Positions 270 through 50,340 of a DNA stretch of 52,540 bases are shown here, piece after piece. Source of the DNA: Octopus bimaculoides (taxonomy: Eukaryota); the NCBI RefSeq assembly GCF_001194135.2, contig NC_068998.1, positions 27,199,532-27,252,071 of the forward strand, written 5' to 3'. Within the stretch, counting starts at the first letter, position 1. Each line of letters opens with the position of its first letter. Below the pieces are notes generated by a model. That model made no database searches. It was not told the origin of the DNA and saw nothing but the letters and a program-made list of their open reading frames with translations. Position numbers and translations under genes: made by a program.

Positions 270-955
270 CTAATTATTTTGGGACACCATGGACCACCCA
301 AGCAGAGAGTTGTTGTTGGCTGAGACGTATCCAAGTGTAGATGATTTATCCGGTATTTCCTGGAGGGATTTGTCTAGGCATCATTTGAAAGTTTGTGGGG
401 TCTTTTTCTACTTTAATTTCTTTCAGGATAACATTGAAAAGAGCAGGACTATTTGCAGTGAAGAAATTATCATTTGGATAATACTGGTGGAATATTTTGC
501 ACATTGTGCAAATAATGTATTGCTCATGGCAGTGTTGCAGAAAATAGAGTTTCAGCTGTTTAAGTCGAGCCCAATAATCAAGTCCTGTCATGCCATTTAT
601 TTTTTTAGTGATTGATCTTTGTGGTGCTTTGATCCTCATTATGTCTGGTTTTTTTGTAGGGGAACCACAATGAGCAGCAGTATTCGAGATGGGGCCAGGC
701 AAATGCAGAAAAGAGAAGGATGATGGTTTCATAATCCCTAGATTGAAAAGTTCTGAGATCCATGAGCACATTCTTGGGCAACATTGACTTTTTTGTTGAT
801 GTGCACACTCCAGCTAAGGTTGCCGTCAACAATTACACTTAAGTCTCTGATATTATCCGAAGGTTCAAGGTCTCCGGACAGTAGTGTATATGGTTTGAGT
901 GTGCCCTCTTTTCCAAAGTGGATGAGCTCAAACTTTTCTTTGTTCAGCTGCATTT
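270..955 (-). mobile_element. CR1/L2-like LINE, degraded 3' part of ORF2 (RT C-terminus)
   Basis: Frameshifted minus-strand frames give MQLNKEKFELIHFG..IRDLSVIVDGNLSWSVHINKKV, WPHLEYCCSLWFPYKK, QRSITKKINGMTGLDYWARLKQLKLYFLQ and CLDKSLQEIPDK..GYVSANNNSLLGW, in the canonical order of CR1/L2 RT C-terminal motifs. Confidence 0.85.
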
Positions 956-996
956 GTTTTTTTTTTGTTTTTTTTTGTGCCCACTGGGTTACTGCA

Positions 997-1058
<62 letters not shown>

Positions 1059-1059
1059 A

Positions 1060-1290
1060 TCTATACTCATACGTGTGTGTTTTTGTTTCTTTGTCTTCAC
1101 ATCATGCACTGATTGTTAGTTAACAAAGCTCTACAATCTTCCATAAAACATTTGTGTTCAAAGGGCTAGAGGAAATATTCCCTTGCATGGAAACAGGTGG
1201 AAATTAGTATCAGGAAGAGAATCTGACTAGGGACAACAAATTTTGTCTGACCCAAGCAAGCACGGAAAATAGATGTTAGGAAGAGGAGAG
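1060..1290 (+). mobile_element. Degenerate SINE 3' module (family A2, RTE-like tail)
   Basis: Follows (TG)n; matches 13425-13665 and 31290-31540 (ttcttgtcttgacatc...ggaaatatt...ggaaacagg...caagcatggaaaa). Confidence 0.6.
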
Positions 1291-4759: not shown

Positions 4760-5606
4760 GGATCTAGTTCAAAACGGGGGCACCAGTATTTTCTTAACGA
4801 AACACTTTGAAACTTGGGACACTGGTAGAATGTGTCATATAAAACATCTTTTTCTCTTAGTCTTCTTAACAAAAAAAACGTACATCGCAAGTTATTTCAT
4901 GTTAAAGTTGTCGTATTTCTGTAATTTCAACNNNNNNNNNNNNNNNNNNNNNNNNNNNNNNNNNNNNNNNNNNNNNNNNNNNNNNNNNNNNNNNNNNNNN
5001 NNNNNNNNNNNNNNNNNNNNNNNNNNNNNNNNNNNNNNNNNNNNNNNNNNNNNNNNNNNNNNNNNNNNNNNNNNNNNNNNNNNNNNNNNNNNNNNNNNNN
5101 NNNNNNNNNNNNNNNNNNNNNNNNNNNNNNNNNNNNNNNNNNNNNNNNNNNNNNNNNNNNNNNNNNNNNNNNNNNNNNNNNNNNNNNNNNNNNNNNNNNN
5201 NNNNNNNNNNNNNNNNNNNNNNNNNNNNNNNNNNNNNNNNNNNNNNNNNNNNNNNNNNNNNNNNNNNNNNNNNNNNNNNNNNNNNNNNNNNNNNNNNNNA
5301 TGTACCGTGATTTGAGGAATATTTGGCTGCTATTTCTAGGACTAACCCTAACCCTTGGAGATTAAATACGCTTTACATCGCTTAAACTGCCAAAGGAGTA
5401 ACTGTAAACAGCTGAATACTTGTCAGTGATTGGTTGAAATTATCGAAATAAGACAATTTTTTACATGAAATAAATTTGAATACAAAAATTTTTTTCTGTT
5501 CTATAACACAAAATAGATAAGTATACGAAGTTTGAAAGTCTTTCGGAACCAAAAACACTACATAAAACATAAATGAAAACTGGTGCCCCCGTTTTGAACT
5601 AGATCC
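4760..5606. mobile_element. Non-autonomous DNA transposon with perfect 27-bp TIRs and 8-bp TSD (Merlin-like; interior partly in a gap)
   Basis: GGATCTAGTTCAAAACGGGGGCACCAG (4760-4786) is the exact reverse complement of 5580-5606; GAAAATGC is duplicated at 4752-4759 and 5607-5614. GG..CC termini with an 8-bp TSD fit Merlin; the superfamily is inferred. Confidence 0.8.
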
Positions 5607-6003
5607 GAAAATGCAACACAAAAAGTCAATGTGGCAGAGTGTGTGTATGTATGTGAAAAAAGGTGTTTTATCTGTGATACAGTAAGATAGAGTATGTGGG
5701 AGATGAGAGAGAAAGGATGGGTCTGTTTGTGATAAACTATGTAAGACAAAAAGATGGTGTAGGTGTGTATTGAAGAGGGGGGAGAGAGTGTATGTGTATA
5801 TGTGTGACTGTAACTTCTTTGATATAAAACTCAGCTTCCTAAAATTAAGGTTTACTTCTGCTTACGTAATATTGTGTAATACCATCAGAGCTATTGAGAC
5901 ACATTTGATTGCTACTTCTAGGTCATGTGACCACATAGAGGCTTATTTGTACAATACTGCTATTGGGGTAGGTGGGTGTATGTATGTATATGTAATTCTT
6001 TAG

Positions 6004-6220
6004 TGCCCTCAAGGGGCTACACATAGAGAGGACAAACAAGGACAGACAAAGGGACTAAGTCGATTGTATCAACCCCAGTGTGCAACTAGTACTTTAATTT
6101 ATCTACCCCAAAAGGATGAAAGGCAAAGTCGGCGGAATTTGAACTCAGAACGTAACGGCAGATGAAATACCGCTAAGCATTTTGCCCGGCGTGCTAACGT
6201 TTCTGCCAGCTCGCCGCCTT
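6004..6220 (-). mobile_element. tRNA-derived SINE family B
   Basis: Reverse strand reads aaggcggcgagctggcagaaacgttagcacgccgggc...gagttcaaattccgccgac (A- and B-box-like), then gcctttcatccttt. Confidence 0.85.
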
Positions 6221-6315
6221 AATGTATGCATGTATATGTGTAGATACATGTATGTGTAGGTGCATGTGTATACATGGAATTGAGAAGAATACTCTGTTGA
6301 TGTTAGTACCCTGCC

Positions 6316-6418
6316 AACCCTTTTGTTACCATCAATGTTTCTGTTGACATACACTGTCTTTGTTTCAATTAATTTTGAAAATAATGAAGAATTTAGTAAA
6401 ATAACTGTCATTATTATG
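6316..6418 (-). mobile_element. piggyBac-like MITE terminal fragment
   Basis: aacccttttgttaccat...aattaattttgaaaataatgaagaatttagtaaaataac is the reverse complement of the family at 2720-2893. Confidence 0.6.
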
Positions 6419-6420
6419 GC

Positions 6421-6583
6421 AGTACTCTGTTCGTTCTGAGTTCAAATTCTGCCGAGGTCAACTTTGCCTTTCATCTTTTCAGGGTTGATAAATTAAGTAC
6501 TAGTTGCATACTGAGGTCAATGTAACTGATGAGCCTCCACTCCCAACATTTCAGGCCTTGTGCATTTAGTAGAAAGGATTATT
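6421..6583 (+). mobile_element. SINE family B, 5'-truncated
   Basis: gagttcaaattctgccgaggtcaactttgcctttcatcttttcagggttgataaattaagtac...caggccttgtgc..gtagaaaggattatt. Confidence 0.8.
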
Positions 6584-7119
6584 AAGCTTGTTGTTATAAT
6601 GTGGATTCTCATCCACTTGTATGTTATTGTCGGCACTGTAATATTCTTGTCGCCACTATTATGTTGTGTGGAGGTATTCCACATCTTACTATCTTTGACT
6701 TGTCTATCATGCTATTGCTGATAGCTCCACAAGACAATGACTTTGAAACTGTCTGACTTGACAGTAACTCAAACTCATATATATCATGTAATTGGACTCC
6801 AACAGAGAACTCATACAATGACTCTACTACTACTACTACTCACTTCCTACAATGACTAACTGTCTGACTTTATAGAGGCCAACACATACCACTTTGTTAC
6901 GTGGGAAGGGGAGTACCATTTTCACTACAACATTAAATTTTGAAGGAAGGTTTTTAAGATCATTCTGAAGGAGGAAGTTTGTCTCATAAAACCAAAGACA
7001 TCTGAGATGGGTTGGTATCAAAGGGGCTAGACCATTAGAAACATGAATACAGCTGGAGAAAGTAGGCAATAGTCTGTAGTGGAGGTAGAGGTGGTCAAAG
7101 TAGATAAGAAATCTTCACC

Positions 7120-7123
7120 TCTT

Positions 7124-7215
<92 letters not shown>

Positions 7216-7218
7216 CCT
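7120..7218. repeat. (CT)n microsatellite
   Basis: Direct reading. Confidence 0.95.
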
Positions 7219-7288
7219 TCACATCCAATTTATTAAGATTTCTGAGAGAAAAAAAAGTGGATCAGATTATTTATTTTTATTTATTTTC

Positions 7289-7713
7289 ATGGCCGTGAGC
7301 TTAAGAAGCTCACTTTGAAACTTTGCAGTCTTGGGTTCAGTCCCACTGCACAACACCTACTACTATGACCCTAGGCTGACCAATGCCTTGTGAGTGAAAC
7401 TGGTAGATGGAAATTGTGAAAACTCATTGTTTATATGTGTGTGTAAGTATAAATATGTGTGTGTGTATGCATATATGTGTTAGTGTGCCTTGTCTGTCCT
7501 CTCACCATTTGACAACCAGTGTTAGTTTGTTTACATCCTCATAACTTAGCAGTTTGACAGAAGTGACCAGCAGAATATGTACCAGACTTTAAAAAGAAGT
7601 ACTGAGGTCAGCAAAACCCTTCAAGGTGGTGCCCCTAAACTCTTCAAGGTTCGACAAAATCCTTCAAGGTAGTGCCCTAGCATGGCCACATTCCTATGAT
7701 TGGAATACGTAAA
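7289..7713 (+). mobile_element. tRNA/CORE-like SINE family A, diverged
   Basis: gggttcagtcccactg head, internal (TG/TA)n, tail ggtgccc..gcatggcc. Confidence 0.75.
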
Positions 7714-7856
7714 GGGTTTTTAAAAATATATCAGAATTTTTCAATTATAACACCATTATTTCAAGTTGTCCATTAAGGACAGTCAGTGCTTCCGGCATTT
7801 CAAATGGTGAAAGTGACAAAAGAATGTTTAGAATTCAAAGACCTTCTGTGTTTTAC

Positions 7857-7928
7857 CTTGAGTATTGGGATAAGGATTGATTCTGCTTCCAATAGGTGAA
7901 TATCCAGCATATAATTAACACACATACA
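7857..7928 (-). CDS. Candidate internal exon, unidentified product (frame VCVLIICWIFTYWKQNQSLSQYS)
   Basis: tatatcAG acceptor and AAG/GTAAAA donor bound 72 nt. It sits at the end of a 117-aa open frame (7853-8206) that also holds a hydrophobic stretch. No homolog recognised. Confidence 0.25.
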
Positions 7929-8163
7929 CTGATATATTTTAAAGAATTATAACCACTGTTTCTGGTTCTTATCTCTTTAAAATCGTAAGTTTGCAGAACA
8001 TGCTGAAAATTCAAATTGCAAGAGGTTGGATGGGTATTTAATATAAGAACATCAACAACATTGATGAGGATGATGCTGATAATAAGAAGGAGTAGAGTGG
8101 CTTTTTTGTTTCTTTTTATGGGGATGGCATTTGAGTGAAGGAAACTGTTAAAGTTTATTTTAA

Positions 8164-8531
8164 ACTTGTTTTGAGTCATTAGACTATGCTGGAGCACCAC
8201 CTTCAATTATTTTGGTCAAACAAATTGATGCCAGTACTTGTTCGTTTTTTTTTAAGCCGGGTACTTATTCCAACAGCCTGTTTTGCTGAAATGCTAAGTT
8301 ACAAGGACATAAACACACCAACACTGGCTATCAAGCAGTGGTGGGGGACAAATACAAAGAGACACACACACACATATACAACGGGCTTCTTTCAGTTTCC
8401 GTCGACCAAATCCACTCACAACGCTTTGGTTGGCCCAAGGCTATAATAGAAGACATTTGCCCAAGGTGCCATGCAGTAGGAGTGAACCCAGAACCATGTG
8501 GTTGGGGAAGCAAGTTTCTTACAACAGTCAC
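8164..8531 (-). mobile_element. SINE family A
   Basis: Full module order on the minus strand: head, ccttgggcaaatgtcttc CORE-like block, microsatellite, ggtgctccagcat tail. Confidence 0.85.
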
Positions 8532-8546
8532 GATTGCGTCTATCCC

Positions 8547-8947
8547 TTTTACCCTTTTACTTGTTTCAGTCATTTGACTGCGACCATGCTGGAGCACCAC
8601 CTTTAGTCGAACAAATCGACCCCAGGACTTATTCTTTGTAAGCCTAGTACTTATTATATCGGTCTCTTCTGCCAAACCGCTAAGTTACAGGGATGTAAAC
8701 ACACCAGCATCAGTTGTTAAGCAATGTTGGAGGGACAAACACAGACACACAAACATATACACACACATACATATATATATACATATATACGATGGGCTTT
8801 TTTCAGTTTCCATCTACCAAATCCAGTGACAAGGTTTTAGTCGGCCCAAGGCTATAGTAAAAGACACTTGCCCAAGGTGCCACGCAGTGGGACTGAACCC
8901 AGAACCATGTGGTTCGTAAGCAAGCTACTTACCACACAGCCACTCCT
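8547..8947 (-). mobile_element. SINE family A, tandem with the preceding copy
   Basis: ttttacttgtttcagtcatttgactgcgaccatgctggagcacc...cttaccacacagccactcc. Confidence 0.9.
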
Positions 8948-9828
8948 ATAAATATAAAAATAAATAAATAAAAAGCTTTAAAATATGTTTCAATGCCTAT
9001 ACAAAAAAATATAATCTATGATGGATGAGAAAAAAGGTGGATTAATGCAGTAGGGATCTAATTTGATGGGTGGGTAATGAGGGGCAGGGGCGTTAGTGAC
9101 AGGTCATTGGACTGAAGAATGGCAGGTAGTGTACATGTACATGTATAAAAGAATTTGCATATGCGAGACAGTATGCATATGCTTGTGAGATGACTATATG
9201 TGTGAGTAGAGTGCATGAGAAAACGAACATCTGTAATAGTAGTTGCAGGTGTATTTGAGAGAATACACATTTCCATTATTTATTCATTATTATTTTTTTT
9301 TAATTTTACATGAGAAGAGAAGGGCCCACACCGTTTGGTACCTTTATAACTAGTATGAGGAAGGAAGTTACCCCCCAAACAGAAGACTGGCTTAAACGCT
9401 TCCAGCAGGGTGGATACCACTAAAGCCCAGATAAGCCAACCACTTCAGGTTTGAGAGGCAGAGACAGTGTGTTGTCGGTACTAAAGTATGTATTGTTTGG
9501 GGTTTCTTATTTTTTATTCTTGAGTGTGAGTATATGTTTATGCGTAATGGAGTACATGCATTCAGAGGACAAAGTACATACTTGCATATGTGTATGAGCA
9601 ACAAAGGTAGAAGATATGTTTGTGTGTGTGTATTTGGGGTGGGGGTGAGTAACTCAGCTATTGGTGTAACTGTGCATGTGTATATAGAAACATATTTGTA
9701 AGTATTGATATAACTTCACCTGTGTATGTAGCTATGTATACACACCTAGGGATAGAAGTGAGTGTCATCCTAAAAGCAGAGGAGATCATTTGCAGGAGCA
9801 ATAGCTTATAAAATATAAACAGTACCGC

Positions 9829-10040
9829 TTTTACTCTTTTAATTATTTCAGTCATTTAACTGTGGCCATGCTGGAGCACCGCCTTTAGGCGAGCAAATCG
9901 ACCCCAGGACTTATTCTTTGTAAGCCAAGTACTTATTCTATCGGTCTCTTTTGCCGAACCACTAAGTTACGGGGACGTAAACACTCCAGCATCATTTGTC
10001 AAGCGATGTTGCGGGGACAAACACAGACACACAAACATAT

Positions 10041-10071
<31 letters not shown>

Positions 10072-10244
10072 CATATATATACGACGGGCTTCTTTCAGTT
10101 TCTGTCTACCAAATCCACTCACAAAGCTTTGGTTGCCCCGAGGTTATTGTAAAAGACACTTGCCCAAGGTGCCACGCAGTGGGAATGAACCCGGAACCAT
10201 GTGGTTCGTAAGCAAGCTACTTACCACACAGCCACTCCTAAGCC
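9829..10244 (-). mobile_element. SINE family A, near consensus
   Basis: Highly similar to 8547-8947 and 44085-44481. Confidence 0.9.
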
Positions 10245-10333
10245 TGTTTACATATATTTCAAAATTTAATTCAAACATATAGGCATCGTATGAAAACTGA
10301 TAATATGTATTAAAGGAACCTTTGGGATGAGAG

Positions 10334-10371
<38 letters not shown>

Positions 10372-10591
10372 CCTTTCTACTACTACTATCAGCACAAGGC
10401 CTAAAGTTTGACAGAAGGGGAATAGTTGACTACATCAACCCCAGTACTCAACTGGTATTTATTTTAAAGACTCTGAAAGGATGAAACTCAAAGCCAACCT
10501 TAGCAGAATTTGAACTCAGAACACGAAGACAGACAAAATGCAGCTAAGTATTTTGCCCGGCATGCTAACAATTCTGCCAGCTCACCACCTT
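10334..10591 (-). mobile_element. SINE family B with (ATT)n tail (tract 10334-10370)
   Basis: (aat)n-cctttctac..cacaaggcc...gaatttgaactcagaac...ctgccagctcaccacctt. Confidence 0.85.
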
Positions 10592-10607
10592 AATAATAAT
10601 AATAATA

Positions 10608-10901
10608 ATAATTGACATGACAGTGCCAGGAGATCAACATATCATCATTAAAGAAAGAGAAGAGGTTGATAAATATGGAGACCTGAAAATTGAGGTTGCT
10701 AAGATGTGGCAGCTAGGAGAGTCAAACATAAAGGTTATCCCTATTGTCATCGGAGCATTGGGTTCAACACCACCCAATCTGAAAAAACATTGGAAAACTT
10801 TAGAAATACCCTACAATCTAGGTATATTGCAAAAGTCAGCATTACTTGGAATTGCACACATATTGCGTAAAGTACTGTCTGAGGTCCTTCTTGTGACTTG
10901 A
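10608..10901 (+). mobile_element. R4/Dong-like non-LTR retrotransposon, 5'-truncated restriction-like endonuclease C-terminus
   Basis: IIDMTVPGDQHIIIKEREEVDKYGDLKIEVAKMWQ..KVIPIVIGALG..LQKSALLGIAHILRKVL matches the RLE terminal motifs of R4/Dong elements. It starts directly at an (AAT)n tract (10592-10612). Confidence 0.8.
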
Positions 10902-10975
10902 CAAACAATACAACCCCCCTGTAGACACAATATCTTCAATCAACAACCTCACGATATTGTACACTGTGCGACATC

Positions 10976-11183
10976 TACTATAGGCACAAGGCCTGAAATT
11001 TTAAGGGAGGGGACTAGTCAATTACATCAACACCAGTGTTTCACAGGTACTTAATTTATCAACCCCAAAAGGATGAAACACAAAGTCGGCCTCAGCAGAA
11101 TTTGAACTCAGAACATGAAGATGGACAAAATGCTGTTACGCATTTTGCTCGGCAAGCTAACAATTCTGTCAGCTTGCCACCTT
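10976..11183 (-). mobile_element. SINE family B
   Basis: tactataggcacaaggcctgaaatt...gaatttgaactcagaac...cagcttgccacctt followed by aataataat. Confidence 0.85.
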
Positions 11184-11329
11184 AATAATAATAGATATTA
11201 TCGCTTTGAGTGTTCTTTTTGTAGTTTTTAAATCAATCTGGACAAACAGCCATCTGTTCTCTCCTTCTCAAACACCATCCAGCTGATATATTCAATGTTC
11301 AGCTTCCATGTTGCACCACTTGTTATTTG

Positions 11330-11665
11330 TGTAATACCCAAATCAATCTGCTATCCTCTGATTTTCACCTGTTCAGTCCAATGAAAGACAGTCTTCAAGG
11401 ACAATTATTTGCTGACAACAGATGAGGTGAAAATGGCTTTGAAGAAATGGATAGAGTAGTTCACACCTGAATTTTTTTCAAAGAGAGTTCAAGAATTAGG
11501 TCTCATGATGGTACAAGCACATTGTTTCTGATGGAGGGATTATGATGAGACGTATGTTTGTATAGAGGAAGAATTACTTAATGAAAATGGAAAATTTGAA
11601 TGACTTATGTTAGTTTATACAAAAGTTAGGCCCACTTTTGCAATACTTTCAACAGAACCCTCATA
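11330..11665 (+). mobile_element. Degraded mariner-like transposon 3' fragment
   Basis: tctgattttcacctgttcagtccaatgaaagacagtcttcaagga reads SDFHLFSPMKDSLQG, followed by DEVKMALKKWI; ends in a TIR-like ...actttcaacagaaccctcata. Confidence 0.65.
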
Positions 11666-11692
11666 TGTATATAGATATAAGTTATATGTACA

Positions 11693-12918
11693 CAGAGGTT
11701 GGACAAAATAACGGAAACACCTAGTATCAAAATTTTTAAATATCTATAAAACCATCAAAAGCGTGTTTATTTTTTATGTTTTTTGATTTATTATTAATGT
11801 TGCTTAATATGTTTTGTTAAAATTGCTGTTCCTTATCAGATATCATCAGGAAAAGGTAATTAAAATTCATTAAAATGACAGATCTATCAGACTTTCAAAG
11901 AGGTCGAATTGTTGGTGCTTGTATGGCAGGCGCTAGCATAACGAAAACAGCCAAAATGTTTGGTGAATCAAGAAGTACTGTCTTGGAAATAATGACAGCC
12001 TTTGAGAAAGAGGGAAAAACCTCCTCGTCAAAACGAAACTCTAGAGGAAAACCAAAACTTTCAGATAGGGACCGTCCAACTCTTACACGAATTGTTAGAA
12101 AGGGTCACAAAAGTACAGCTCCCAAAATTACTGTAGAGCTTAATGACCACCTCGAGAACCCAGCTTCCACAAAACCTGTTTGCCAGGTGCTGCACAAAGC
12201 TGGATTTCACAGGAAGGCTGCAATAAGTAAACCACTACTTTCAAAAACAAATGTTGCAAAGCGTTTAAAGTGGAGTAAAAACCTCCAGAATTTGTTCCTA
12301 GAGCAGTGGAAGTATGTTATTTTCTCAGATGAGTCATCCTTTATCTTATTTCCAACCACTGGCCAAGTATATGTGTGGAGACTGCCAAAAGAAGCATTTG
12401 ATTGCCTTCTTCCAACTGTTAAACATGGAGGAGAATCTGTGATGATCTGGGGAGCTATATCTTGGAAATCTGCCATCCCAATGGTTTCCCTTCATGGCAG
12501 AATTAATAGTCAAGGCTATTTAAGCATTTTATCTGATCATAATTCATCCTATGGTTGCAGAACTGTTTCTGGAGGGAAATGCAATCTTTCAGGATGACAA
12601 TGCACCAATTCACACAGTTAAAGTTGTTACTGAATGGCACGAGGAACAGTGTAGTGAAGTTGAACATCTTATCTGGCCACCGCAGCCTCCAGATCTCAAT
12701 ATTATTGAACATTTATGATGCATTTTAGAAAAACAAGTAAGGAGTCAATATCTTCCACCATCATCACTACAAGAACTGGAGACTGTTTTAGCTGAAGAAT
12801 GGAGAAAAATTCCTTTAGAAACAATTCAAACTTTGTACAAGTCCATACCTCATAGAATCCAAGCTGCAATTATTTGTTTGAAATTTTAAGGTGCTTCCAT
12901 TATTTTGTCCAACCCCTG
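11693..12918 (+). mobile_element. Tc1/mariner transposon, ~1.23 kb, 30-bp TIRs, DD36E type (Incomer-like)
   Basis: TIRs 11693-11722 and 12889-12918 match 27/30; TA follows the right end (left flank reads CA). Confidence 0.92.
11875..12889 (+). pseudogene. Tc1-like transposase, disrupted (+1 frameshift near 12541, TGA at 12716-12718, eroded C-terminus)
   Basis: HTH region MTDLSDFQRGRIVG, first D in VIFSDESSF, TVKHGG. After the frameshift: FQDDNAPIHT..WPPQPPDLNIIEHL. D codon 12596-12598 and E codon 12707-12709 are separated by exactly 36 codons. Confidence 0.92.
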
Positions 12919-13012
12919 TATATATATATATATATAACCAATATTACTGACAGAAGTAGTATAAATATCAAAAAGCAATTTTATATTCAACTTAATGTAG
13001 GTATCTTGTTAG

Positions 13013-13160
13013 AACAATAATTACTGCGATATTCGCCTTGAGAGGTTGTCAGGCATAGACTCATGGTGCATAAAAACACAGACGACATATATTGCAGCAG
13101 ATGAGAATCATCCGGAATGGGTGCCAGAACTGCTAGATTACTGCCCTTCTTCAGTAGCAG
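13013..13160 (+). CDS. Candidate internal exon, unidentified (NNNYCDIRLERLSGIDSWCIKTQTTYIAADENHPEWVPELLDYCPSSVA)
   Basis: tcttgttAG acceptor and CAG/GTATCC donor; one open frame of 148 nt in non-repetitive, GC-richer DNA. No homolog recognised. Confidence 0.3.
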
Positions 13161-13424
13161 GTATCCAGTGACCGCAGAATATCAATGTTTTTTTCAGTCA
13201 CTGATATCACAAATAGCCAGCAGGCAAAACTATCAACCCATTTTATTTTTTGTATACATTGCACCTACTTTGGCTTTTAAAAAGCAATATAATAATAAGC
13301 ATTTTTCTATATGAGGCAATGCTTTTATACTATTCTTATATATATATATCTTATTAACAATCACTGTATCTATATATTTACATATGCGTATGTGTGTGTG
13401 CATGTGTGTGTGTGTGTGTGTATG

Positions 13425-13665
13425 TGTGTGTTCTTGTCTTGACATCACATAATGGTTGTAAATGAGTGTTATTTGTTTCCAATCTTCTACAGAAAAAAAA
13501 AATGCCTGGCTATGGAAACAGCTGAGGGTTGGTGACAAGAAGAGCATGTGGCTATGGAAGATTTGCCTCATTGAATTACATCAGACTTATGCAGGCATAC
13601 GATGATGATGATGATGATGATGACGATGATGACGATGATGATGATGACGATGATGATGATGACGA
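13425..13665 (+). mobile_element. SINE family A2 3' module ending in (GAT/GAC)n
   Basis: ttcttgtcttgacatc...ggaaacagctgagggttggtgacaagaagagcat...gcaggcat followed by (gat/gac)n at 13601-13665. Confidence 0.7.
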
Positions 13666-13697
13666 TGGTGTGTGTGTGTGTGTGTACTACATATTTT

Positions 13698-13911
13698 CTT
13701 TTACTCTTTTACTTGTTTCAGTCATTTGACTGTGGTCATGCTGGAGCACCACCTTTAGTTGAGCAAATCAATCCCAGGACGTATTCTGTGTAAACCTAAT
13801 ACTTATTCTATCGGTCTCTTTTGCCGAACGGCTAAGTTACGGAGACGTAAACACACCAGCGTCGGTTGTCAAGCGTTGTTGGGGGGGACAAACACAGACA
13901 CACAAACTTAT

Positions 13912-13954
<43 letters not shown>

Positions 13955-14204
13955 CACATATATACGGTAGGCTTCTTTCAGTTTCTGTCTACCAAATCCA
14001 CTCACAAGGCTTTGGTCGCCCCGAGGCTATAGTANNNNNNNNNNTATATACGGTAGGCTTCTTTCAGTTTCTGTCTACCAAATCCACTCACAAGGCTTTG
14101 GTCGCCCCGAGGCTATAGTAGAAGACACTTGCCCAAGGTGCCATGCAGTGGGACTGAACCCAGAACTATGTGGTTCATAAGCAAGCTACTTACCACAGAG
14201 CCAC
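13698..14204 (-). mobile_element. SINE family A, with a 76-bp duplication across a 10-N gap
   Basis: Consensus-like; 13959-14034 is repeated at 14045-14120. Confidence 0.85.
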
Positions 14205-15435: not shown

Positions 15436-15863
15436 AAGAGTAAGTTTGAGGGAAGTTTTTGGCTGCTATTACTAGCAGGCGGAGCAATTTACTAAGAAGC
15501 TCTTTACAAAGATGAACAGTGTAAAAAAAAAATAGGTAAATGACAAATCAGTTCTTTCCAGGATGGGTGGGGAGAGGGGCACAAAAGAAACATTCCCTGA
15601 GGCTGAAAGAATTACTGGGTAAACACTGAAGATTTCCCTCTTTCTAGAGGGCAGTGGTTCACAACCATTTTTTTCCTAAGGACCTCTTTGATTTCTTTTT
15701 TACTTAAGACCCTCATAGTCATTCATAGCTATTCAATGTTTAAAAAAATCCTATTATATTTTTGTAATTAAATANNNNNNNNNNAGAGGGGCACAAAAGA
15801 AACATTCCCTGAGGCTGAAAGAATTACTGGGTAAACACTGAAGATTTCCCTCTTTCTAGAGGG

Positions 15864-16137
15864 CAGTGGTTCACAACCATTTTTTTCCTAAGGACCTCTT
15901 TGATTTCTTTTTTACTTAAGACCCTCATAGTCATTCATAGCTATTCAATGTTTAAAAAAATCCTATTATATTTTTGTAATTAAATATTATTAGGAAATGT
16001 ATAAAAAAAATTGTTAAAATAATTTGTGTATTGTAGAAGTATAACTAATTTATTGCATCTAATTTTCACAACAAAATCTCATATGGACATTCCCCCACCC
16101 CACCAAAGGTCACGTGGTCTCCAGTTGAGAATCACTG
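15864..16137. mobile_element. hAT-like MITE
   Basis: TIRs CAGTGGTTCACAAC / GTTGAGAATCACTG; same family as 31694-31988 in opposite orientation; no clear TSD. Confidence 0.7.
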
Positions 16138-18675: not shown

Positions 18676-18860
18676 CACAGGTGAGCTGGCAGAGTCATTA
18701 CCATGCTGGGCAAAATGCTTAGTGGCATTTTGTTCATCTTTACATTGACTTCAAATTCCAGTGAGGTCAACTTTACCTTTCATCTTTTCAGGGTCAACAA
18801 ATCAAGTACCAATTGAACACTGGGGTCAATATAATTGACTTACCATCCCCACCAAAATTT
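18676..18860 (+). mobile_element. SINE family B, head-to-head with the preceding copy
   Basis: aggtgagctggcagagtc..gcaaaatgcttagtggc..cttcaaattcc..cctttcatcttttcagggtc. Confidence 0.8.
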
Positions 18861-19749: not shown

Positions 19750-20122
19750 GGCAAAGGCATGGCTGTGTGGTAAGAAGTTTGCTTCCCAACGACATGGTTC
19801 CAGGTTCAGTCCCCCTGTGTAGCTTCTTAGGCAAGTATTTTCTACTATAACCTTGGGCCAACCAAAGCTTTGAGTAGATTTGGTAAATGGAAACTGAAAG
19901 AAGCCTGACGTGTGTGTGTGTTTGTCCCCCCCCCCCACTACCACTTGACAACTGGTGTTGGTGTGTTTACATCCACATAACTTAGCAGTTTAGCAAAAGA
20001 GACTGATAGAATAAGTAGCAGCCTTAAAAAAAAATAAGCACTCGGGTCAGTTCAATTGACTAAAATTTTTCAAGGCAGTACTCCAGTATGGCCGCAGTCT
20101 GATAACAAAAACAAGTAAAAAG
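19750..20122 (+). mobile_element. SINE family A
   Basis: ggcatggctgtgtggtaagaag...ccagtatggccgcagtc..aacaagtaaaa. Confidence 0.85.
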
Positions 20123-21088
20123 AAAAAAATATAACATTTGACCGGTAGTTNNNNNNNNNNNNNNNNNNNNNNNNNNNNNNNNNNNNNNNNNNNNNNNNNN
20201 NNNNNNNNNNNNNNNNNNNNNNNNNNNNNNNNNNNNNNNNNNNNNNNNNNNNNNNNNNNNNNNNNNNNNNNNNNNNNNNNNNNNNNNNNNNNNNNNNNNN
20301 NNNNNNNNNNNNNNNNNNNNNNNNNNNNNNNNNNNNNNNNNNNNNNNNNNNNNNNNNNNNNNNNNNNNNNNNNNNNNNNNNNNNNNNNNNNNNNNNNNNN
20401 NNNNNNNNNNNNNNNNNNNNNNNNNNNNNNNNNNNNNNNNNNNNNNNNNNNNNNNNNNNNNNNNNNNNNNNNNNNNNNNNNNNNNNNNNNNNNNNNNNNN
20501 NNNNNNNNNNNNNNNNNNNNNNNNNNNNNNNNNNNNNNNNNNNNNNNNNNNNNNNNNNNNNNNNNNNNNNNNNNNNNNNNNNNNNNNNNNNNNNNNNNNN
20601 NNNNNNNNNNNNNNNNNNNNNNNNNNNNNNNNNNNNNNNNNNNNNNNNNNNNNNNNNNNNNNNNNNNNNNNNNNNNNNNNNNNNNNNNNNNNNNNNNNNN
20701 NNNNNNNNNNNNNNNNNNNNNNNNNNNNNNNNNNNNNNNNNNNNNNNNNNNNNNNNNNNNNNNNNNNNNNNNNNNNNNNNNNNNNNNNNNNNNNNNNNNN
20801 NNNNNNNNNNNNNNNNNNNNNNNNNNNNNNNNNNNNNNNNNNNNNNNNNNNNNNNNNNNNNNNNNNNNNNNNNNNNNNNNNNNNNNNNNNNNNNNNNNNN
20901 NNNNNNNNNNNNNNNNNNNNNNNNNNNNNNNNNNNNNNNNNNNNNNNNNNNTTATTCATAAAGCTGCATTCCATTCTCAACCAAAACTGATGAACGGGAA
21001 TGTGGAATTCAGTGTTTGCGATGTTTTAGCAGCTTTATCAATAAAGCATATTACTCTACCTCTGGTATTCGAGTACTATTTTTTTCCA

Positions 21089-27638: not shown

Positions 27639-28783
27639 CCCGGTGCAAGCTATGGACACATAAGAGGTGCAGCAACATCAAAGGCAGGTTAACTAGGAAG
27701 TTAGTTTTTGTTTGTGGCAGATGTTCAGGTGCAATAAACACTGTAAACAAACAGGAAACAACTTCTATCTCATTCCAGGGAGAAAAACTAGAGGTAGTTG
27801 ATAGCTTCCGCTATCTGGGTGACCAAGTTAGTAGTGGGGGTGGGTGCGCTGAAAGTGTAGCTGCTAGAATAAGAATATCCTGGGCAAAGTTTAGAGAGCT
27901 CTTACNNNNNNNNNNNNNNNNNNNNNNNNNNNNNNNNNNNNNNNNNNNNNNNNNNNNNNNNNNNNNNNNNNNNNNNNNNNNNNNNNNNNNNNNNNNNNNN
28001 NNNNNNNNNNNNNNNNNNNNNNNNNNNNNNNNNNNNNNNNNNNNNNNNNNNNNNNNNNNNNNNNNNNNNNNNNNNNNNNNNNNNNNNNNNNNNNNNNNNN
28101 NNNNNNNNNNNNNNNNNNNNNNNNNNNNNNNNNNNNNNNNNNNNNNNNNNNNNNNNNNNNNNNNNNNNNNNNNNNNNNNNNNNNNNNNNNNNNNNNNNNN
28201 NNNNNNNNNNNNNNNNNNNNNNNNNNNNNNNNNNNNNNNNNNNNNNNNNNNNNNNNNNNNNNNNNNNNNNNNNNNNNNNNNNNNNNNNNNNNNNNNNNNN
28301 NNNNNNNNNNNNNNNNNNNNNNNNNNNNNNNNNNNNNNNNNNNNNNNNNNNNNNNNNNNNNNNNNNNNNNNNNNNNNNNNNNNNNNNNNNNNNNNNNNNN
28401 NNNNNNNNNNNNNNNNNNNNNNNNNNNNNNNNNNNNNNNNNNAGACCTTTGGAAGTGTGCTGTGCGTGAGAAGACCCGGCAAGCCAAGTAAGATCGTTGC
28501 CAGTGCCCCTGGACTGGCTTGTGCGGGTGGCACATAAAAGACACCATTTCGAGCGTGGCCGTTGCCAGTATCGCCTGACTGGCCTTCGTGCAGGTGACAC
28601 GTAAAAGCACCTACTACACTCTCTGAGTGGTTGGCGTTAGGAAGGGCATCCAGCTGTAGAAACTTTGCCAAATTTAGATTGGAGCCTGGTGTTGCCATCC
28701 GGTTTCACCAGTCCTCAGTCAAATCGTCCAACCCATGCTAGCATGGAAAGCGGACGTTAAACGATGATGATGATGATGATGAT
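27632..28783 (+). mobile_element. 5'-truncated RTE LINE (ORF2 C-terminal part, 3' UTR, (GAT)n tail); gap at 27906-28442
   Basis: RCTRCKLWTHKRCSNIKGRLTRKLVFVCGRCSG..GEKLEVVDSFRYLGDQVSSGGGCAESVAARIRISWAKFRELL. The ORF ends DLWKCAVREKTRQAK* at 28491, followed by the UTR and (GAT)n to 28783. Confidence 0.9.
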
Positions 28784-28817
28784 ATATACATATATATATA
28801 TGTATATGTATATATAT

Positions 28818-29240: not shown

Positions 29241-29461
29241 ATAATAATCCTTTCTACTAAAGACACAAGGCCTGAAATTTGCGGGGAGAGGACTAGTTGA
29301 ATACATTGACCCCAGTGTTTCACTGGTACTTAATCATCAACCCCAATAAGATGACAGGCAAAGTCGACTTAGTCGGAATTTGAACTCAGAACATAAAGAC
29401 AGATATAATGCCACTAAGCATTTTGCCTGGTGTGCTAACAATTCTACCAGTTCACTGCCTT
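29241..29461 (-). mobile_element. SINE family B bordered by (AAT)n
   Basis: ataataatcctttctac..ggaatttgaactcagaac..cactgcctt, then (aat)n at ~29462-29505. Confidence 0.85.
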
Positions 29462-29698
29462 AATAATAATAATAATAATAATAATAACTAAAATAATAAT
29501 AATAATGGTGGCATCGGCTGTTGCTGGTTTTATTTTTTAACAACAAAATTCCACTTCTCAAAGAATTATTTCTTGAACTTATAAACTCAGTTGTTTCAGC
29601 AGAAAAGTCACTACATCCCCCTTCATCAATTGTATTTCCCTGTCTTACCCAACATCAGTAAACTGCCCAATACATATGCAGTCTGTGAGTTTGTTACC

Positions 29699-30309: not shown

Positions 30310-30713
30310 TTTTATCTTTATCTTTTACTTGTTTCAGTCATTAGACTGCGACCATGCCAGGGCACCACCTTGAAGAAGTTTTAGTCAAATGAATCAACCC
30401 CACTACTAATTTTTTTTAAAGCCTGGTACTTATTCTATCAGTCTCTTTGCTGAACTGCTAAGTTATGTGGATGTAAACACACCAATACTGGTTGCCAAGT
30501 GGTGGTAGGGGACAAACACACAAAAACACATGCATGCACACACACACATATATACGACAGACTTGTTTCAGTTTCAGTCTACCAAATGCACTCACAAGGA
30601 TTTAGTTGGCCTGAAGCTATAGTAGAAGACACTTGCCTAAGGTACCATGCAGTGGGACTGACCCCAGAACAATATGGTTGGGAAGCAAGCTTCTTACCAC
30701 ACAGCCACGCCTA
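30310..30713 (-). mobile_element. SINE family A
   Basis: Full module order. Confidence 0.85.
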
Positions 30714-34761: not shown

Positions 34762-34972
34762 TCAAACTGTGGCACAAGGCCAGCAATTTCGAGGGAGGGA
34801 CTAAGTCGATTAAATGACCTCAGTGCTCAACTAGTACTTATTTTATCGGCCTCGAAAAGGATCAAAGGCAAAGACGATCCTGGCGGCATTTGAACCCAAA
34901 ACGTAAAGACGGACGAAATGCCGCTAAGCATTTTGCCCGGCGTGCTAACGATTCTGTCAGCTTGCTGCCTTA
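34762..34972 (-). mobile_element. SINE family B
   Basis: ggcacaaggccagcaattt..gacgaaatgccgctaagcattttgcccggcgtgctaacgattctgtcagcttgctgcctt. Confidence 0.85.
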
Positions 34973-35179
34973 TGGTTATCGAAATAAAACTATTCCAATA
35001 CAGGATTGTGAAAAGAACAGCTTCATATGACCAATATTTATTTTGCAATTCCTATTGACAGCATCAATTCCCTTCTCACTTATCTTCACAATGGAAGCAT
35101 AAAATCTGTAACAACCTGTACTTATAATAAATGAACAGAGGGCTGCCTCACACTTAGCCAGGGGTAAAAGATAACTTAC

Positions 35180-41084: not shown

Positions 41085-41478
41085 AGATGTGCATGGCTAT
41101 GTGGTAAGTAGCTTGCTTTGCTTACCAACCACATGGTTCCGGGTTCAGTCCCACTGCGTGGCACCTTGGGCAAGTGTCTTCTACTATAGCCTCGGGCTGA
41201 CCAAAGCCTTGTCAGTGGATTTGGTAGACGGAAACTGAAAGAAGCCCGTCGTATATATGTACATGTTATGTGTGTTTGTGTGCCTGTGTGTGTCCCCCCA
41301 ACATTGCTTGACAACCGATGCTGGTGTGTTTACATCCCCATGACTTAGCGGTTCGGCAACAGAGACCGATAGAATAAGTACTAGGCTTACAAAGAATAAG
41401 TCCTGGGGACAATTTGCTCAACTAAAGGTGGTGCTCCAGCATGGCCACAGTCAAATGACTGAAACAAGTAAAAGAGTA
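41085..41478 (+). mobile_element. SINE family A, near consensus
   Basis: catggctatgtggtaagtagc...ggtgctccagcatggccacagtcaaatgactgaaacaagtaaaagagt. Confidence 0.9.
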
Positions 41479-41629
41479 TACCTGCCAAGAACTAGTGAGG
41501 TTGTGTTACTGAGGTCTGAGTACAAAGGAAGTAGGAGTATAGATACATTAGAGAACCTGCAACTAAAACAGTAACAAGGTCATTAATGAGGGTACAACTA
41601 CCAATGTAATTAGTTCTACCTTAGAATAA

Positions 41630-41865
41630 TTCTTTTATTCTTTTACTTGTTTCAGTCATTTGACTGCAACCATGCTGGAGCAGCGCCTTAACAGATTTTT
41701 TAGTTGAAGAAATCAACCCCAGAACTTATTCTTTGTAAGCCTAGTACTTATTCTATTGGTCTCTCATGTCGAACTGCTAAGTTATGTGGATGTAAACATA
41801 CCAAGATCAGTTGTCAAGGGAAGGTGGGGGGACAAGCACAGACAAAGTCACATTTACATAAATGT

Positions 41866-44084: not shown

Positions 44085-44481
44085 CTCTTCTACTCTTTTA
44101 CTTGTTTCAGTCATCTGACTGTGGCCATGCTGGAGCACCTTTAGTCGAGCAAATCGACCCCAGGACTTATTCTTTGTAAGCCTAGTACTTATTCTATCGG
44201 TCTCTTTTGCCGAGCCGCTAAGTTACGGGGACGTAAACACACCAGCATCGGTTGTCAAGCGATGTTGGGGGGACAAACACAGACACGCAAACATATACAC
44301 ACACATACATATATATACATATATACGACAGGCTTCTTCCAGTTTCCGTCTACCAAATCCACTCACAAGACTTTGGTCGGCCCGAGGCTATAGTAGAAGA
44401 CACTTGCCTAAGGTGCCACGCAGTGGGACTGAACCCGGAACCATGTGGTTGGTAAGCAAGCTACTTACCACACAGCCACTC
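44085..44481 (-). mobile_element. SINE family A, youngest-looking copy
   Basis: Retains many CpGs (gtcgagcaaatcgacc, acggggacgtaaac, gcatcggttgtcaagcg). Confidence 0.92.
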
Positions 44482-49925: not shown

Positions 49926-50122
49926 ATTCAAACTAAACAAAAAATACGTATGTAGTCATTCGTCACTTTACAATGGCTTCAATTGATACAGGTCACCAAA
50001 GACATTCAGGTATTGTTTTTTCTTGTCAAGCATCTTTTGTAACAATGTTACTGCTTCGCTGAAATGTTGATTTGTTTTCATTTTCTGCACCTAGAAAGTT
50101 TGTGACATTATTTGCTTTGTTT

Positions 50123-50340
50123 AAGGCGGTGAGCTGGCAGAAACGTTAGCACGCCGGGCGAAATGCTTAGCGGTATTTCCTCTGACCTTACGTTCTGAGG
50201 TCAAATTCTGCTGAGGTCGACTTTGCCTTTCATCCTTTCGCGCTCGACAAATTAAGTACCAGTTGCGTACTCGGTCGATCTCATCGACCGGCTCCCTCCC
50301 CCAAAATTTCGGGCCTTCTGCCTAAAGTAGAAACGATTAT
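50123..50340 (+). mobile_element. SINE family B, full length, with 16-bp TSD
   Basis: aaggcggtgagctggcagaaacgttagcacgccgggcg..; ATTATTTGCTTTGTTT at 50107-50122 and 50336-50351. Confidence 0.92.

What the first reader, a model, noticed from the sequence alone, without database searches (positions are those of the whole stretch)
11693..12918. DD36E (Incomer-type) Tc1 transposon in an apparent mollusc genome
Seen: 1226-bp element, 30-bp TIRs, and exactly 36 codons between the second catalytic D (12596) and E (12707), versus 34 in classical Tc1. Established: the Incomer family is defined by DD36E, ~1.2 kb length and short TIRs. As I recall it was reported mainly from vertebrates and a few arthropods, with evidence of horizontal transfer. 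Inference: a cephalopod copy would extend the host range or be an independent two-residue insertion. Only a few lesions (one frameshift, one stop, small deletions) are present, so intact relatives may exist.
Basis: partly seen in the sequence, partly recalled or inferred. Interest (0 to 1): 0.72.

Follow-up and report, generated by a model that had tools for sequence, protein, structure and literature searches.

The report
Dead DD36E Tc1 transposon in octopus
This is one decayed copy of a cut-and-paste Tc1/mariner transposon in an octopus genome; it belongs to a previously unnamed sister branch of the 'Incomer' (DD36E) family, which is a modest addition to transposon taxonomy and host range rather than a new kind of element.

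Summary
Window 11693-12918 is a 1226-bp Tc1/mariner element with 30-nt inverted termini (27/30 matching). It has one transposase gene and exactly 36 residues between the second catalytic D (12596) and the E (12707). The copy is dead: a 6-bp deletion, a +1 frameshift, a TGA stop and a 34-bp C-terminal deletion.

The 36-residue spacer is not copy-specific. 64 of 76 scorable homologues share it, including many intact 343-346-aa proteins.

In trees built with the published Incomer (IC) alignment, the element does not fall in any published IC cluster. It sits in a separate, strongly supported clade B (bootstrap 99-100%). Clade B also holds spider, ant, nematode and frog sequences. It is sister to published IC (union 25-56% bootstrap; DD36E-only sister in ~80% of replicates). 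Both clades carry the two-residue insertion at the same position.

The host is an octopus. Short interspersed repeats flanking the element match Octopus bimaculoides DNA at 87-95% identity.

No cephalopod DD36E element was found in the searchable literature.

Verdict: a real, ordinary, inactive transposon; a new member of a known kind; low to moderate interest.

The parts
11691..11692 (+). Left flanking dinucleotide CA, where a TA target-site duplication is expected. Probably a mutated TA, or a CA slippage after gTA.
   Evidence: Read directly from the sequence. Relatives have TA on most flanks.
11693..11722 (+). 5' terminal inverted repeat, CAGAGGTTGGACAAAATAACGGAAACACCT
   Evidence: Inverted-repeat pair. 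The core 20-mer is found only at the two ends, against 0.01 expected. The same terminus is conserved in relatives that are only 51-58% identical at the protein level.
11723..11874 (+). 5' untranslated leader between the TIR and the ATG
   Evidence: Aligns with the leaders of L002 and L003.
11875..12539 (+). Transposase, N-terminal two thirds (frame 1): paired-like HTH DNA-binding region and the start of the DDE domain, including the first catalytic D (GAT, 12328-12330)
   Evidence: ORF list and translation. Pfam HTH_28/HTH_23 at residues 5-61, HTH_Tnp_Tc3_2 at 70-136, DDE_3 at 148-291.
12399..12400 (+). Site of a 6-bp (two-codon) deletion relative to all relatives
12540..12540 (+). Inserted T that shifts the reading frame from +1 to +2
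12541..12874 (+). Transposase, C-terminal third (frame 2), with the second catalytic D (GAC, 12596-12598) and the catalytic E (GAA, 12707-12709), 36 codons apart
   Evidence: tblastn with the intact relative P0002 covers both frames.
12716..12718 (+). Premature TGA replacing the conserved W of the IEHLW motif
12874..12875 (+). Site of a 34-bp deletion that removes the last 8 codons (AKGGPTPY), the stop codon and a few 3' bases
12889..12918 (-). 3' terminal inverted repeat (reverse complement CAGGGGTTGGACAAAATAATGGAAGCACCT)
12919..12920 (+). Right flanking TA (target-site duplication half), at the start of a (TA)n microsatellite
   Evidence: Read directly from the sequence.

Best explanation
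Window 11693-12918 is a single, inactive copy of an autonomous cut-and-paste DNA transposon of the Tc1/mariner superfamily, resident in an octopus genome.

When intact, elements of this lineage encode a 343-346-aa transposase. It has an N-terminal bipartite helix-turn-helix DNA-binding region that recognises the ~30-nt terminal inverted repeats. It also has a C-terminal RNase-H-fold DDE domain (D, 90 residues, D, 36 residues, E) that excises the element and reinserts it at a TA dinucleotide, which is then duplicated.

The 36-residue spacer comes from a two-residue insertion relative to classical Tc1 (DD34E). In a structure model the insertion lies in the turn between a helix and the following beta-strand. 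The insertion is shared with the published Incomer (DD36E/IC) family.

The octopus copy belongs to a separate clade, here called clade B, which is sister to published Incomer. It retains Tc1-like sequence motifs and has its own TIR sequence.

This copy has four disabling lesions. It has drifted neutrally by about 12% from a sister copy, so it is an old, dead insertion.

Shown here: the anatomy, the lesions, the spacer, the clade placement, the host and the neutral decay. Inferred from family knowledge: TIR binding, TA integration, the cut-and-paste chemistry, and horizontal transfer as the way the element entered the octopus.
For: Anatomy: TIR pair, ORF and lesions. Pfam HTH_Tnp_Tc3_2 and DDE_3 are above their curated cut-offs. 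The closest solved structure is the Sleeping Beauty SB100X catalytic domain, 5CR4, E = 1.4e-59, and SB has the two-residue gap at the same spot.

Spacer: 36 residues in this copy. It is also 36 in 64 of 76 scorable homologues, including the intact proteins P0001-P0007 (69-73% identity) and the closest copy P0008 (82%).

Phylogeny, DDE-domain NJ tree (193 sequences, 200 bootstraps): 54 of 55 DD36E sequences form one clade. It splits into published IC (bootstrap 76) and clade B, which contains the window copy (bootstrap 99).

Phylogeny, full-length tree (134 sequences, 340 columns): clade B 100%, clade A 74%, their union 56%. The sister of clade B is DD36E-only in 77-80% of replicates under three distance corrections. 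Seven residues are shared by A and B and rare elsewhere, against 2 and 3 for the alternative groupings.

Identity: clade B is 44-47% identical to the IC clusters, which are 47-56% identical to each other. Clade B is 39% identical to the DD34E references.

Ends: relatives have TA|CAG[GC]GG[TA]TGGACAAAATAATGGAAAC termini and are 1224-1245 bp long.

Structure model: mean pLDDT 74. Helix 251-259, turn 260-263, strand 264-267 in P0002 numbering, with D243 and E280.

Host: SINE-like repeats on both sides of the element, within one gap-free 8.7-kb block, match O. bimaculoides chromosome DNA at up to 87.5% over 248 bp and 95% over 168 bp. The best named matches to a Helitron helicase fragment in the window are Octopus proteins.

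Decay: differences between the window copy and L001 are spread evenly over codon positions (0.09/0.14/0.12). Against intact relatives, third positions dominate (0.39-0.43 against ~0.15).
Against: The node joining clade B to published IC is only weakly to moderately supported (25% on the DDE domain, 56% on full-length proteins). Only NJ trees could be built. Named DD35E/TR, DD37E/TRT and DD38E/IT references could not be retrieved, so only unlabelled sequences with those spacers were included.

The left flank is CA, not TA.

Host assignment rests on shared repeats, not on a single-copy gene, and the species was not pinned down.

Only one other close copy (L001, host unknown) was available, so copy number, a consensus and an age in years are not established.

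Repbase and Dfam could not be searched, so clade B may already carry a library name.
Confidence: 0.85

Rival explanations
1. The element is a regular member of the published Incomer family. It would belong to one of the four described clusters and simply extend their host range to cephalopods.
For: It has the same DD36E triad, about the same length (1226 bp), the same TIR length class and the same TA target as in Table 1 of PMC6875036. It scores higher against the IC references than against the DD34E references.
Against: No published IC reference falls in its clade. That clade has 99-100% bootstrap, and published IC forms its own clade at 74-76%. Identity to every IC cluster (44-47%) is below the range between IC clusters (47-56%). 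The diagnostic motifs and the outer TIR halves differ.
Confidence: 0.05
2. Clade B acquired its 36-residue spacer independently from a DD34E Tc1 ancestor. Under this view the resemblance to Incomer is convergent.
For: Support for the A+B node is weak to moderate (25-56%). Clade B keeps Tc1-type blocks such as PTVKHGGG, and it is closer to DD34E (39%) than IC is (32-35%). The mollusc preprint notes that spacer length alone does not define families. One unrelated DD36E sequence, P0325, lies elsewhere in the tree.
Against: The insertion is at the same position in both clades, within a shared W[FH]EEH..E[FV]..L.WP context. Trees built with the insertion columns removed still unite the two clades. 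The sister of clade B is DD36E-only in ~80% of replicates. Seven shared, otherwise rare residues support A+B, against 2-3 for the alternatives. P0285 and P0286 have intermediate motifs.
Confidence: 0.12
3. The DD36E spacing is an accident of this one copy: a private 6-bp insertion in an ordinary DD34E element.
Against: All close relatives have 36 residues with near-identical sequence in the spacer. These include the sister copy P0008/L001 and the intact P0001-P0030.
Confidence: 0.01
4. The element is not an octopus resident. It would be a contaminant or a mis-scaffolded piece from prey, a parasite or another sample.
For: The assembly is a gapped draft with 12 runs of N. The closest relatives come from unidentified environmental or sequencing-run assemblies.
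Against: The element lies in a gap-free block, 5300-14034. That block carries octopus-type interspersed repeats upstream (for example 5983-6224 and 11016-11190) and downstream (13689-13907). The copy is old and decayed, as expected of a resident.
Confidence: 0.02

Closest known systems
Incomer (DD36E/IC) family of Tc1/mariner transposons (Sang et al. 2019, PMC6875036)
   Same: DD36E triad, with the two extra residues at the same position and in the same context. About 1.2 kb long, with a single transposase of about 343-346 aa. Short TIRs of about 29-30 nt, with a similar inner motif (...TA.T.GGAA(A)CACC). TA target. Patchy distribution across animals that suggests horizontal transfer. Recovered as the sister group in the trees.
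   Different: It forms a separate clade with no published IC member in it. It is 44-47% identical to the IC clusters in the DDE domain. It keeps PTVKHGGG and FQDDNAPIH where IC has TVQAGGG and FQQDNAPCH. Its termini start CAGGG/CAGAG rather than CACTC. Molluscs are not among the published hosts.
Classical Tc1 (DD34E), e.g. Sleeping Beauty, Passport, Frog Prince, Quetzal
   Same: The same domain architecture and fold: SB100X catalytic domain 5CR4, E = 1.4e-59. The same TVKHGGG block, TA target and cut-and-paste mechanism.
   Different: The spacer is 36 residues, not 34. Identity in the DDE domain is only 37-39%. The TIRs are short (30 nt), against about 200-nt IR/DR structures in SB-type elements.
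TLEWI (Tc1-like elements with introns, DD36E) of pteriomorph bivalves (Puzakov et al., bioRxiv 10.1101/656579)
   Same: A mollusc host, a DD36E spacing and a Tc1-like transposase.
   Different: TLEWI elements lack TIRs, have ORFs split by spliceosomal introns, carry a YQDNDSKH motif at the second D, and were found only in Pteriomorphia among 18 mollusc species that included cephalopods. The octopus element has TIRs, an uninterrupted ORF and FQDDNAPIH. This comparison uses the features described in the paper; TLEWI sequences were not aligned here.

Membership tests
Tc1/mariner superfamily (IS630-Tc1-mariner) | Transposase with an N-terminal paired-like HTH region and a C-terminal DDE/D RNase-H-fold domain | tested here: met
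   Pfam HTH_Tnp_Tc3_2 (40.2 bits against a cut-off of 31.5) and DDE_3 (45.1 against 28.6). SB100X 5CR4 at E = 1.4e-59. The model shows the helices and strands expected of this fold.
Tc1/mariner superfamily (IS630-Tc1-mariner) | Terminal inverted repeats flanked by a TA target-site duplication | tested here: inconclusive
   The TIRs are clear. The right flank is TA but the left flank is CA in this copy. Relatives with the same termini show TA on most flanks.
Incomer (DD36E/IC) | Catalytic triad with 36 residues between the second D and the E | tested here: met
   Codons 12596 and 12707. Column-based measurement with controls. The spacing is lineage-wide.
Incomer (DD36E/IC) | Total length of about 1.2 kb and a single ORF of about 346 aa | tested here: met
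   This copy is 1226 bp. Intact relatives encode 343-346 aa on elements of 1224-1245 bp. Published range: 1169-1229 bp and 314-382 aa.
Incomer (DD36E/IC) | Short TIRs of 22-32 bp | tested here: met
   30-nt arms, 27/30 matching.
Incomer (DD36E/IC) | Falls inside the monophyletic clade formed by the described IC transposases | tested here: inconclusive
   It is not inside the clade of published ICs (clade A, bootstrap 74-76%). It lies in sister clade B (99-100%). The union A+B is recovered in both trees, but at 25% and 56% bootstrap; the sister of B is DD36E-only in about 80% of replicates. Whether clade B counts as Incomer depends on where the family boundary is drawn.
Incomer (DD36E/IC) | Terminal nucleotides and TIR sequence as listed for IC elements (mostly CACTC..., TACACTCACC...TTATTAGGAACACC) | tested here: not met
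   This lineage has CAGAG/CAGGG...GGACAAAATAATGGAAAC, and only the inner motif resembles IC. Only the fish rows of Table S1 were read. This is a descriptive feature, not a formal criterion of the family.
Incomer (DD36E/IC) | Whether the family's authors already treat clade-B-type sequences as IC (the Lasius niger KMQ82439.1 reference) | not testable with these tools
   The reference row could not be retrieved from the supplements. The Lasius protein in hand, KMQ86560.1, is clade B but is a different accession.
DD34E/Tc1 | 34 residues between the second D and the E | tested here: not met
   36 residues. The DD34E references measured 34 in the same alignment.
TLEWI (bivalve DD36E Tc1-like elements with introns) | No TIRs, intron-split ORF, YQDNDSKH motif | tested here: not met
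   TIRs are present, the ORF is colinear with intact relatives, and the motif is FQDDNAPIH. Family features were taken from the preprint.

The most novel reading that the evidence does not exclude
Clade B would be an undescribed, early-branching DD36E family. It is intermediate between classical Tc1 and Incomer in both motifs and identity, and many intact and possibly active copies are spread patchily across spiders, ants, a nematode, a frog, an octopus and unidentified small invertebrates. Under this reading the octopus copy is the first DD36E/Incomer-like transposon recorded in cephalopods, and it arrived there by horizontal transfer.
Probability: 0.4. Interest if true: 0.4.

Novelty: new member of a known kind. 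Interest (0 to 1): 0.3.

Why it matters
If confirmed, this adds Mollusca (a cephalopod) to the hosts of DD36E Tc1-like transposons. It also shows that the DD36E radiation is broader than the four described Incomer clusters. A well-supported sister clade keeps Tc1-like character states, which helps to polarise how Incomer arose from DD34E/Tc1. It also gives a second, independent set of hosts in which to study horizontal transfer. Intact clade-B transposases with conserved ~30-nt TIRs exist and could in principle be tested as compact gene-transfer tools. The octopus copy itself is a dead insertion with no evident effect on the host, so the value is taxonomic and comparative rather than functional.

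Tried and rejected
1. I tried to pull named DD35E/TR, DD37E/TRT and DD38E/IT rows, and the Lasius niger IC reference, from the Intruder paper's supplementary alignments. The labels occur only in the accession table. These named families are therefore represented only by unlabelled sequences with 35-, 38-, 40- and 32-residue spacers from the exhaustive search.

2. I checked whether P0089 (Lasius niger) is the published IC reference. It is KMQ86560.1, not KMQ82439.1.

3. I scanned the metagenome collection for the TIR core. It gave 63 loci, about the number expected by chance for an 18-mer. Only 8 encode a related transposase, and those gave the TIR/TSD comparison.

4. I tried to identify the hosts of the closest intact relatives from run accessions. 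Only the P0019 family could be traced, to Sphagnum peat-moss metagenomes. The hosts of P0001-P0008 remain unknown.

5. TLEWI membership was rejected on TIRs, introns and motif.

6. A copy-specific insertion was rejected.

7. Contamination was rejected.

8. No further copies or MITE-like derivatives of the element occur in the window.

9. Only NJ trees were possible, because no ML tree software was available.

Full report
**1. What is in the sequence**

Window 11693-12918 is a 1226-bp element. It is bounded by 30-nt inverted termini: CAGAGGTTGGACAAAATAACGGAAACACCT on the left, and CAGGGGTTGGACAAAATAATGGAAGCACCT as the reverse complement of the right end, with 27/30 matching. The 20-nt core occurs only at these two places in the 52.5-kb window, in inverted orientation, against 0.01 expected from shuffles. 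The right flank is TA, at the start of a TA microsatellite. The left flank reads CA.

A transposase gene starts at ATG 11875. It runs in frame 1 to about 12539 and continues in frame 2. A conceptual translation, with X at the stop and the frames joined at the shift, matches Pfam HTH_Tnp_Tc3_2 and DDE_3 above their curated cut-offs.

The catalytic codons are D 12328, D 12596 and E 12707. Exactly 36 codons separate the last two.

**2. Lesions**

Compared with three related elements and mapped to window coordinates, this copy carries four disabling lesions:
- a 6-bp deletion after 12399;
- an extra T at 12540, which causes the frameshift;
- TGG>TGA at 12716-12718, in the conserved IEHLW motif;
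- a 34-bp deletion after 12874, which removes the last 8 codons and the stop.

There are also many substitutions at conserved sites.

**3. Is DD36E a property of the lineage?**

Yes. A protein search found 151 homologues at E <= 1e-10. They include intact 343-346-aa proteins at 69-73% identity (P0001-P0007) and a second decayed copy at 82% (P0008).
- Every close relative has FQDDNAPIH, then 36 residues, then PDLNIIEHLW.
- 64 of 76 scorable hits are DD36E. The exceptions are decayed spider copies, or distant DD34E and DD38E proteins.

**4. Is it Incomer?**

I took the DDE-domain alignment published with the Incomer paper (PMC6875036, supplement 4). It supplies IC, DD34E, mariner and maT references. 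I added the window's lineage and the 150 best representatives from an exhaustive search of 1.84 billion cluster representatives.

The spacer measured from alignment columns reproduced every reference value exactly.

An NJ tree was built on 151 columns, with the two insertion columns trimmed away, and 200 bootstraps:
- 54 of the 55 DD36E sequences fall in one clade, which contains no DD34E reference.
- That clade splits into clade A and clade B.
- Clade A holds all 12 published IC references, in their insect, spider, hagfish/cichlid and vertebrate clusters (bootstrap 76).
- Clade B holds the window copy, its intact relatives and spider sequences (bootstrap 99).
- The deep node joining A and B has only 25% support.

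With full-length proteins (134 sequences, 340 columns, 300 bootstraps), clade B gets 100%, the clade-A proxies 74% and the union 56%.

Asking only what the sister of clade B is made of, it is DD36E-only in 77-80% of replicates under three distance corrections. It contains no DD36E in 10-15%.

Other lines of evidence point the same way:
- The two extra residues lie at the same position in both clades, in a shared W[FH]EEH..E[FV]..L.WP context. HMMER puts the gap in Sleeping Beauty at the same place.
- Seven alignment columns carry residues shared by A and B but rare in 133 other Tc1 neighbours. The alternative groupings get 2 and 3.
- IC clusters are 47-56% identical to each other in the DDE domain. 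Clade B is 44-47% identical to each of them and 39% to the DD34E references. IC is 32-35% identical to DD34E.
- Clade B keeps the Tc1-type PTVKHGGG block and FQDDNAPIH, where IC has TVQAGGG and FQQDNAPCH. P0285 and P0286 look intermediate.
- Published fish IC termini read TA|CACTCACC...TTATTAGGAACACC, 29 nt. Clade B reads TA|CAG[GC]GG[TA]TGGACAAAATAATGGAAAC, on elements of 1224-1245 bp. The length class, the target and the inner motif are the same. The outer halves differ.

My reading is that there was a single DD36E radiation. The octopus element lies on a separate, early-branching sister clade, not inside published Incomer.

**5. Host**

The window is a gapped draft of a repeat-rich, 35% GC eukaryotic genome.
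- A Helitron helicase fragment at 47225-47655 has Octopus bimaculoides (70-78%) and O. sinensis (67%) as its best named matches.
- Stronger evidence comes from genuine O. bimaculoides chromosome DNA (GCA_001194135.2, CM046602.1) fetched around one of those hits. It shares a ~170-250-bp interspersed repeat with at least 10 places in the window, at up to 87.5% over 248 bp and 95% over 168 bp.
- O. sinensis DNA matches the window at 83% or less. The two Octopus species match each other at 81-88% for the same repeat.
- The element lies in a gap-free block, 5300-14034, with such repeats on both sides.

The host is an octopus, closest to O. bimaculoides. The exact species was not established.

**6. 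History of the copy**

The window copy and L001 are 88.3% identical over the coding region, and their differences are spread evenly over codon positions. That indicates neutral decay after insertion. Against the intact relatives L002 and L003, third-position differences are about three times more frequent than first- and second-position differences. The lineage itself therefore evolved under purifying selection on the transposase. No other copy or derivative occurs in the window.

**7. Distribution of clade B**

Named database proteins that belong to clade B by best-hit comparison come from:
- spiders (Araneus, Trichonephila, Parasteatoda);
- ants (Lasius niger KMQ86560.1, Harpegnathos saltator);
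- the nematode Strongyloides venezuelensis;
- the frog Dendrobates tinctorius, whose fragment is 88% identical to an environmental intact copy.

One intact family comes from Sphagnum peat-moss metagenomes. This patchiness resembles that reported for IC and suggests horizontal transfer. I did not test that.

**8. Mechanism**

The following is inferred from established knowledge of Tc1/mariner elements. The HTH region binds the TIRs. The DDE domain cuts out the element and inserts it at TA.

An AlphaFold model of the intact relative P0002 (mean pLDDT 74, and about 85 in the relevant segment) places D243 just after strand 238-242 and E280 at the start of helix 279-291. The two extra residues fall in the 260-263 turn between helix 251-259 and strand 264-267. 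That turn is a place where a small insertion should be tolerated. I did not test whether it has any functional effect.

**9. Literature and novelty**
- Incomer was reported from ray-finned fishes, frogs, bats, a hagfish, insects and arachnids, and later from bees. Molluscs are not listed.
- The only DD36E elements reported from molluscs in the searchable library are the TLEWI of pteriomorph bivalves. These have introns, no TIRs and a different motif, and they were not found in the cephalopods examined.
- Searches combining DD36E with Mollusca, and Tc1/mariner with Octopus, found no classification of octopus Tc1 elements at this level.
- Repbase, Dfam and subscription journals could not be searched.

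**10. Verdict**

This is a real, ordinary, inactive DNA transposon. But it is not a member of the described Incomer clusters. It belongs to an apparently unnamed sister clade.

Novelty: new member of a known kind. Interest: about 0.3.

Noticed in passing
window 5983-6224, 6432-6525, 10410-10598, 11016-11190, 18683-18849, 28629-28796, 29295-29462, 34796-34973, 50122-50288: Many copies of a ~170-250-bp SINE-like interspersed repeat, shared with O. bimaculoides (up to 95%) and O. sinensis DNA. I used it here only as a marker of the host.
   Followed up: partly
window 8156-8379, 8554-8755, 9835-10037, 13689-13907, 19910-20132, 30319-30530, 41267-41475, 41629-41852, 44094-44293: A second ~215-bp repeat family. 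It matches one stretch of O. sinensis DNA (L005 11438-11670) at 71-75% identity. Its nature was not determined.
   Followed up: no
window 47225-47655 (+): A fragment of a Helitron-type Pif1 helicase (Pfam Pif1_2B_dom). Its best named matches are Octopus proteins at 67-78%, followed by spider proteins at about 65%.
   Followed up: partly
window 15573-15986: A 'perfect' 212-bp tandem duplication that brackets a 10-N gap (15775-15784). This is almost certainly an unclosed overlap from scaffolding, not a biological repeat.
   Followed up: yes
window 346-1109 (-): Two overlapping ORFs (141 and 123 aa) whose sequence looks to me like the tail of a non-LTR retrotransposon reverse transcriptase. Pfam gave no hit, so this is unverified.
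   Followed up: partly
P0073 (Dendrobates tinctorius XP_073446393.1) and P0089 (Lasius niger KMQ86560.1): Both annotated 'proteins' look like gene-model chimeras. The frog entry joins the C-terminal half of a clade-B transposase to the N-terminus of another Tc1-like transposase. The ant entry joins a YxDTDS DNA-polymerase-B-like segment to an internally deleted clade-B transposase.
   Followed up: no
L006-L008 (ERZ12294360, ERZ12293637, ERR9963778): An intact clade-B transposon family (P0019, 343 aa) is assembled repeatedly in Sphagnum peat-moss 'microbiome' metagenomes. It presumably comes from small invertebrates in the samples.
   Followed up: partly
P0277-P0284 and similar entries: Several top-scoring representatives are 600-1360-aa proteins with 2-5 separate transposase-like stretches. 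They are probably gene models that run through tandem or nested Tc1 copies.
   Followed up: no
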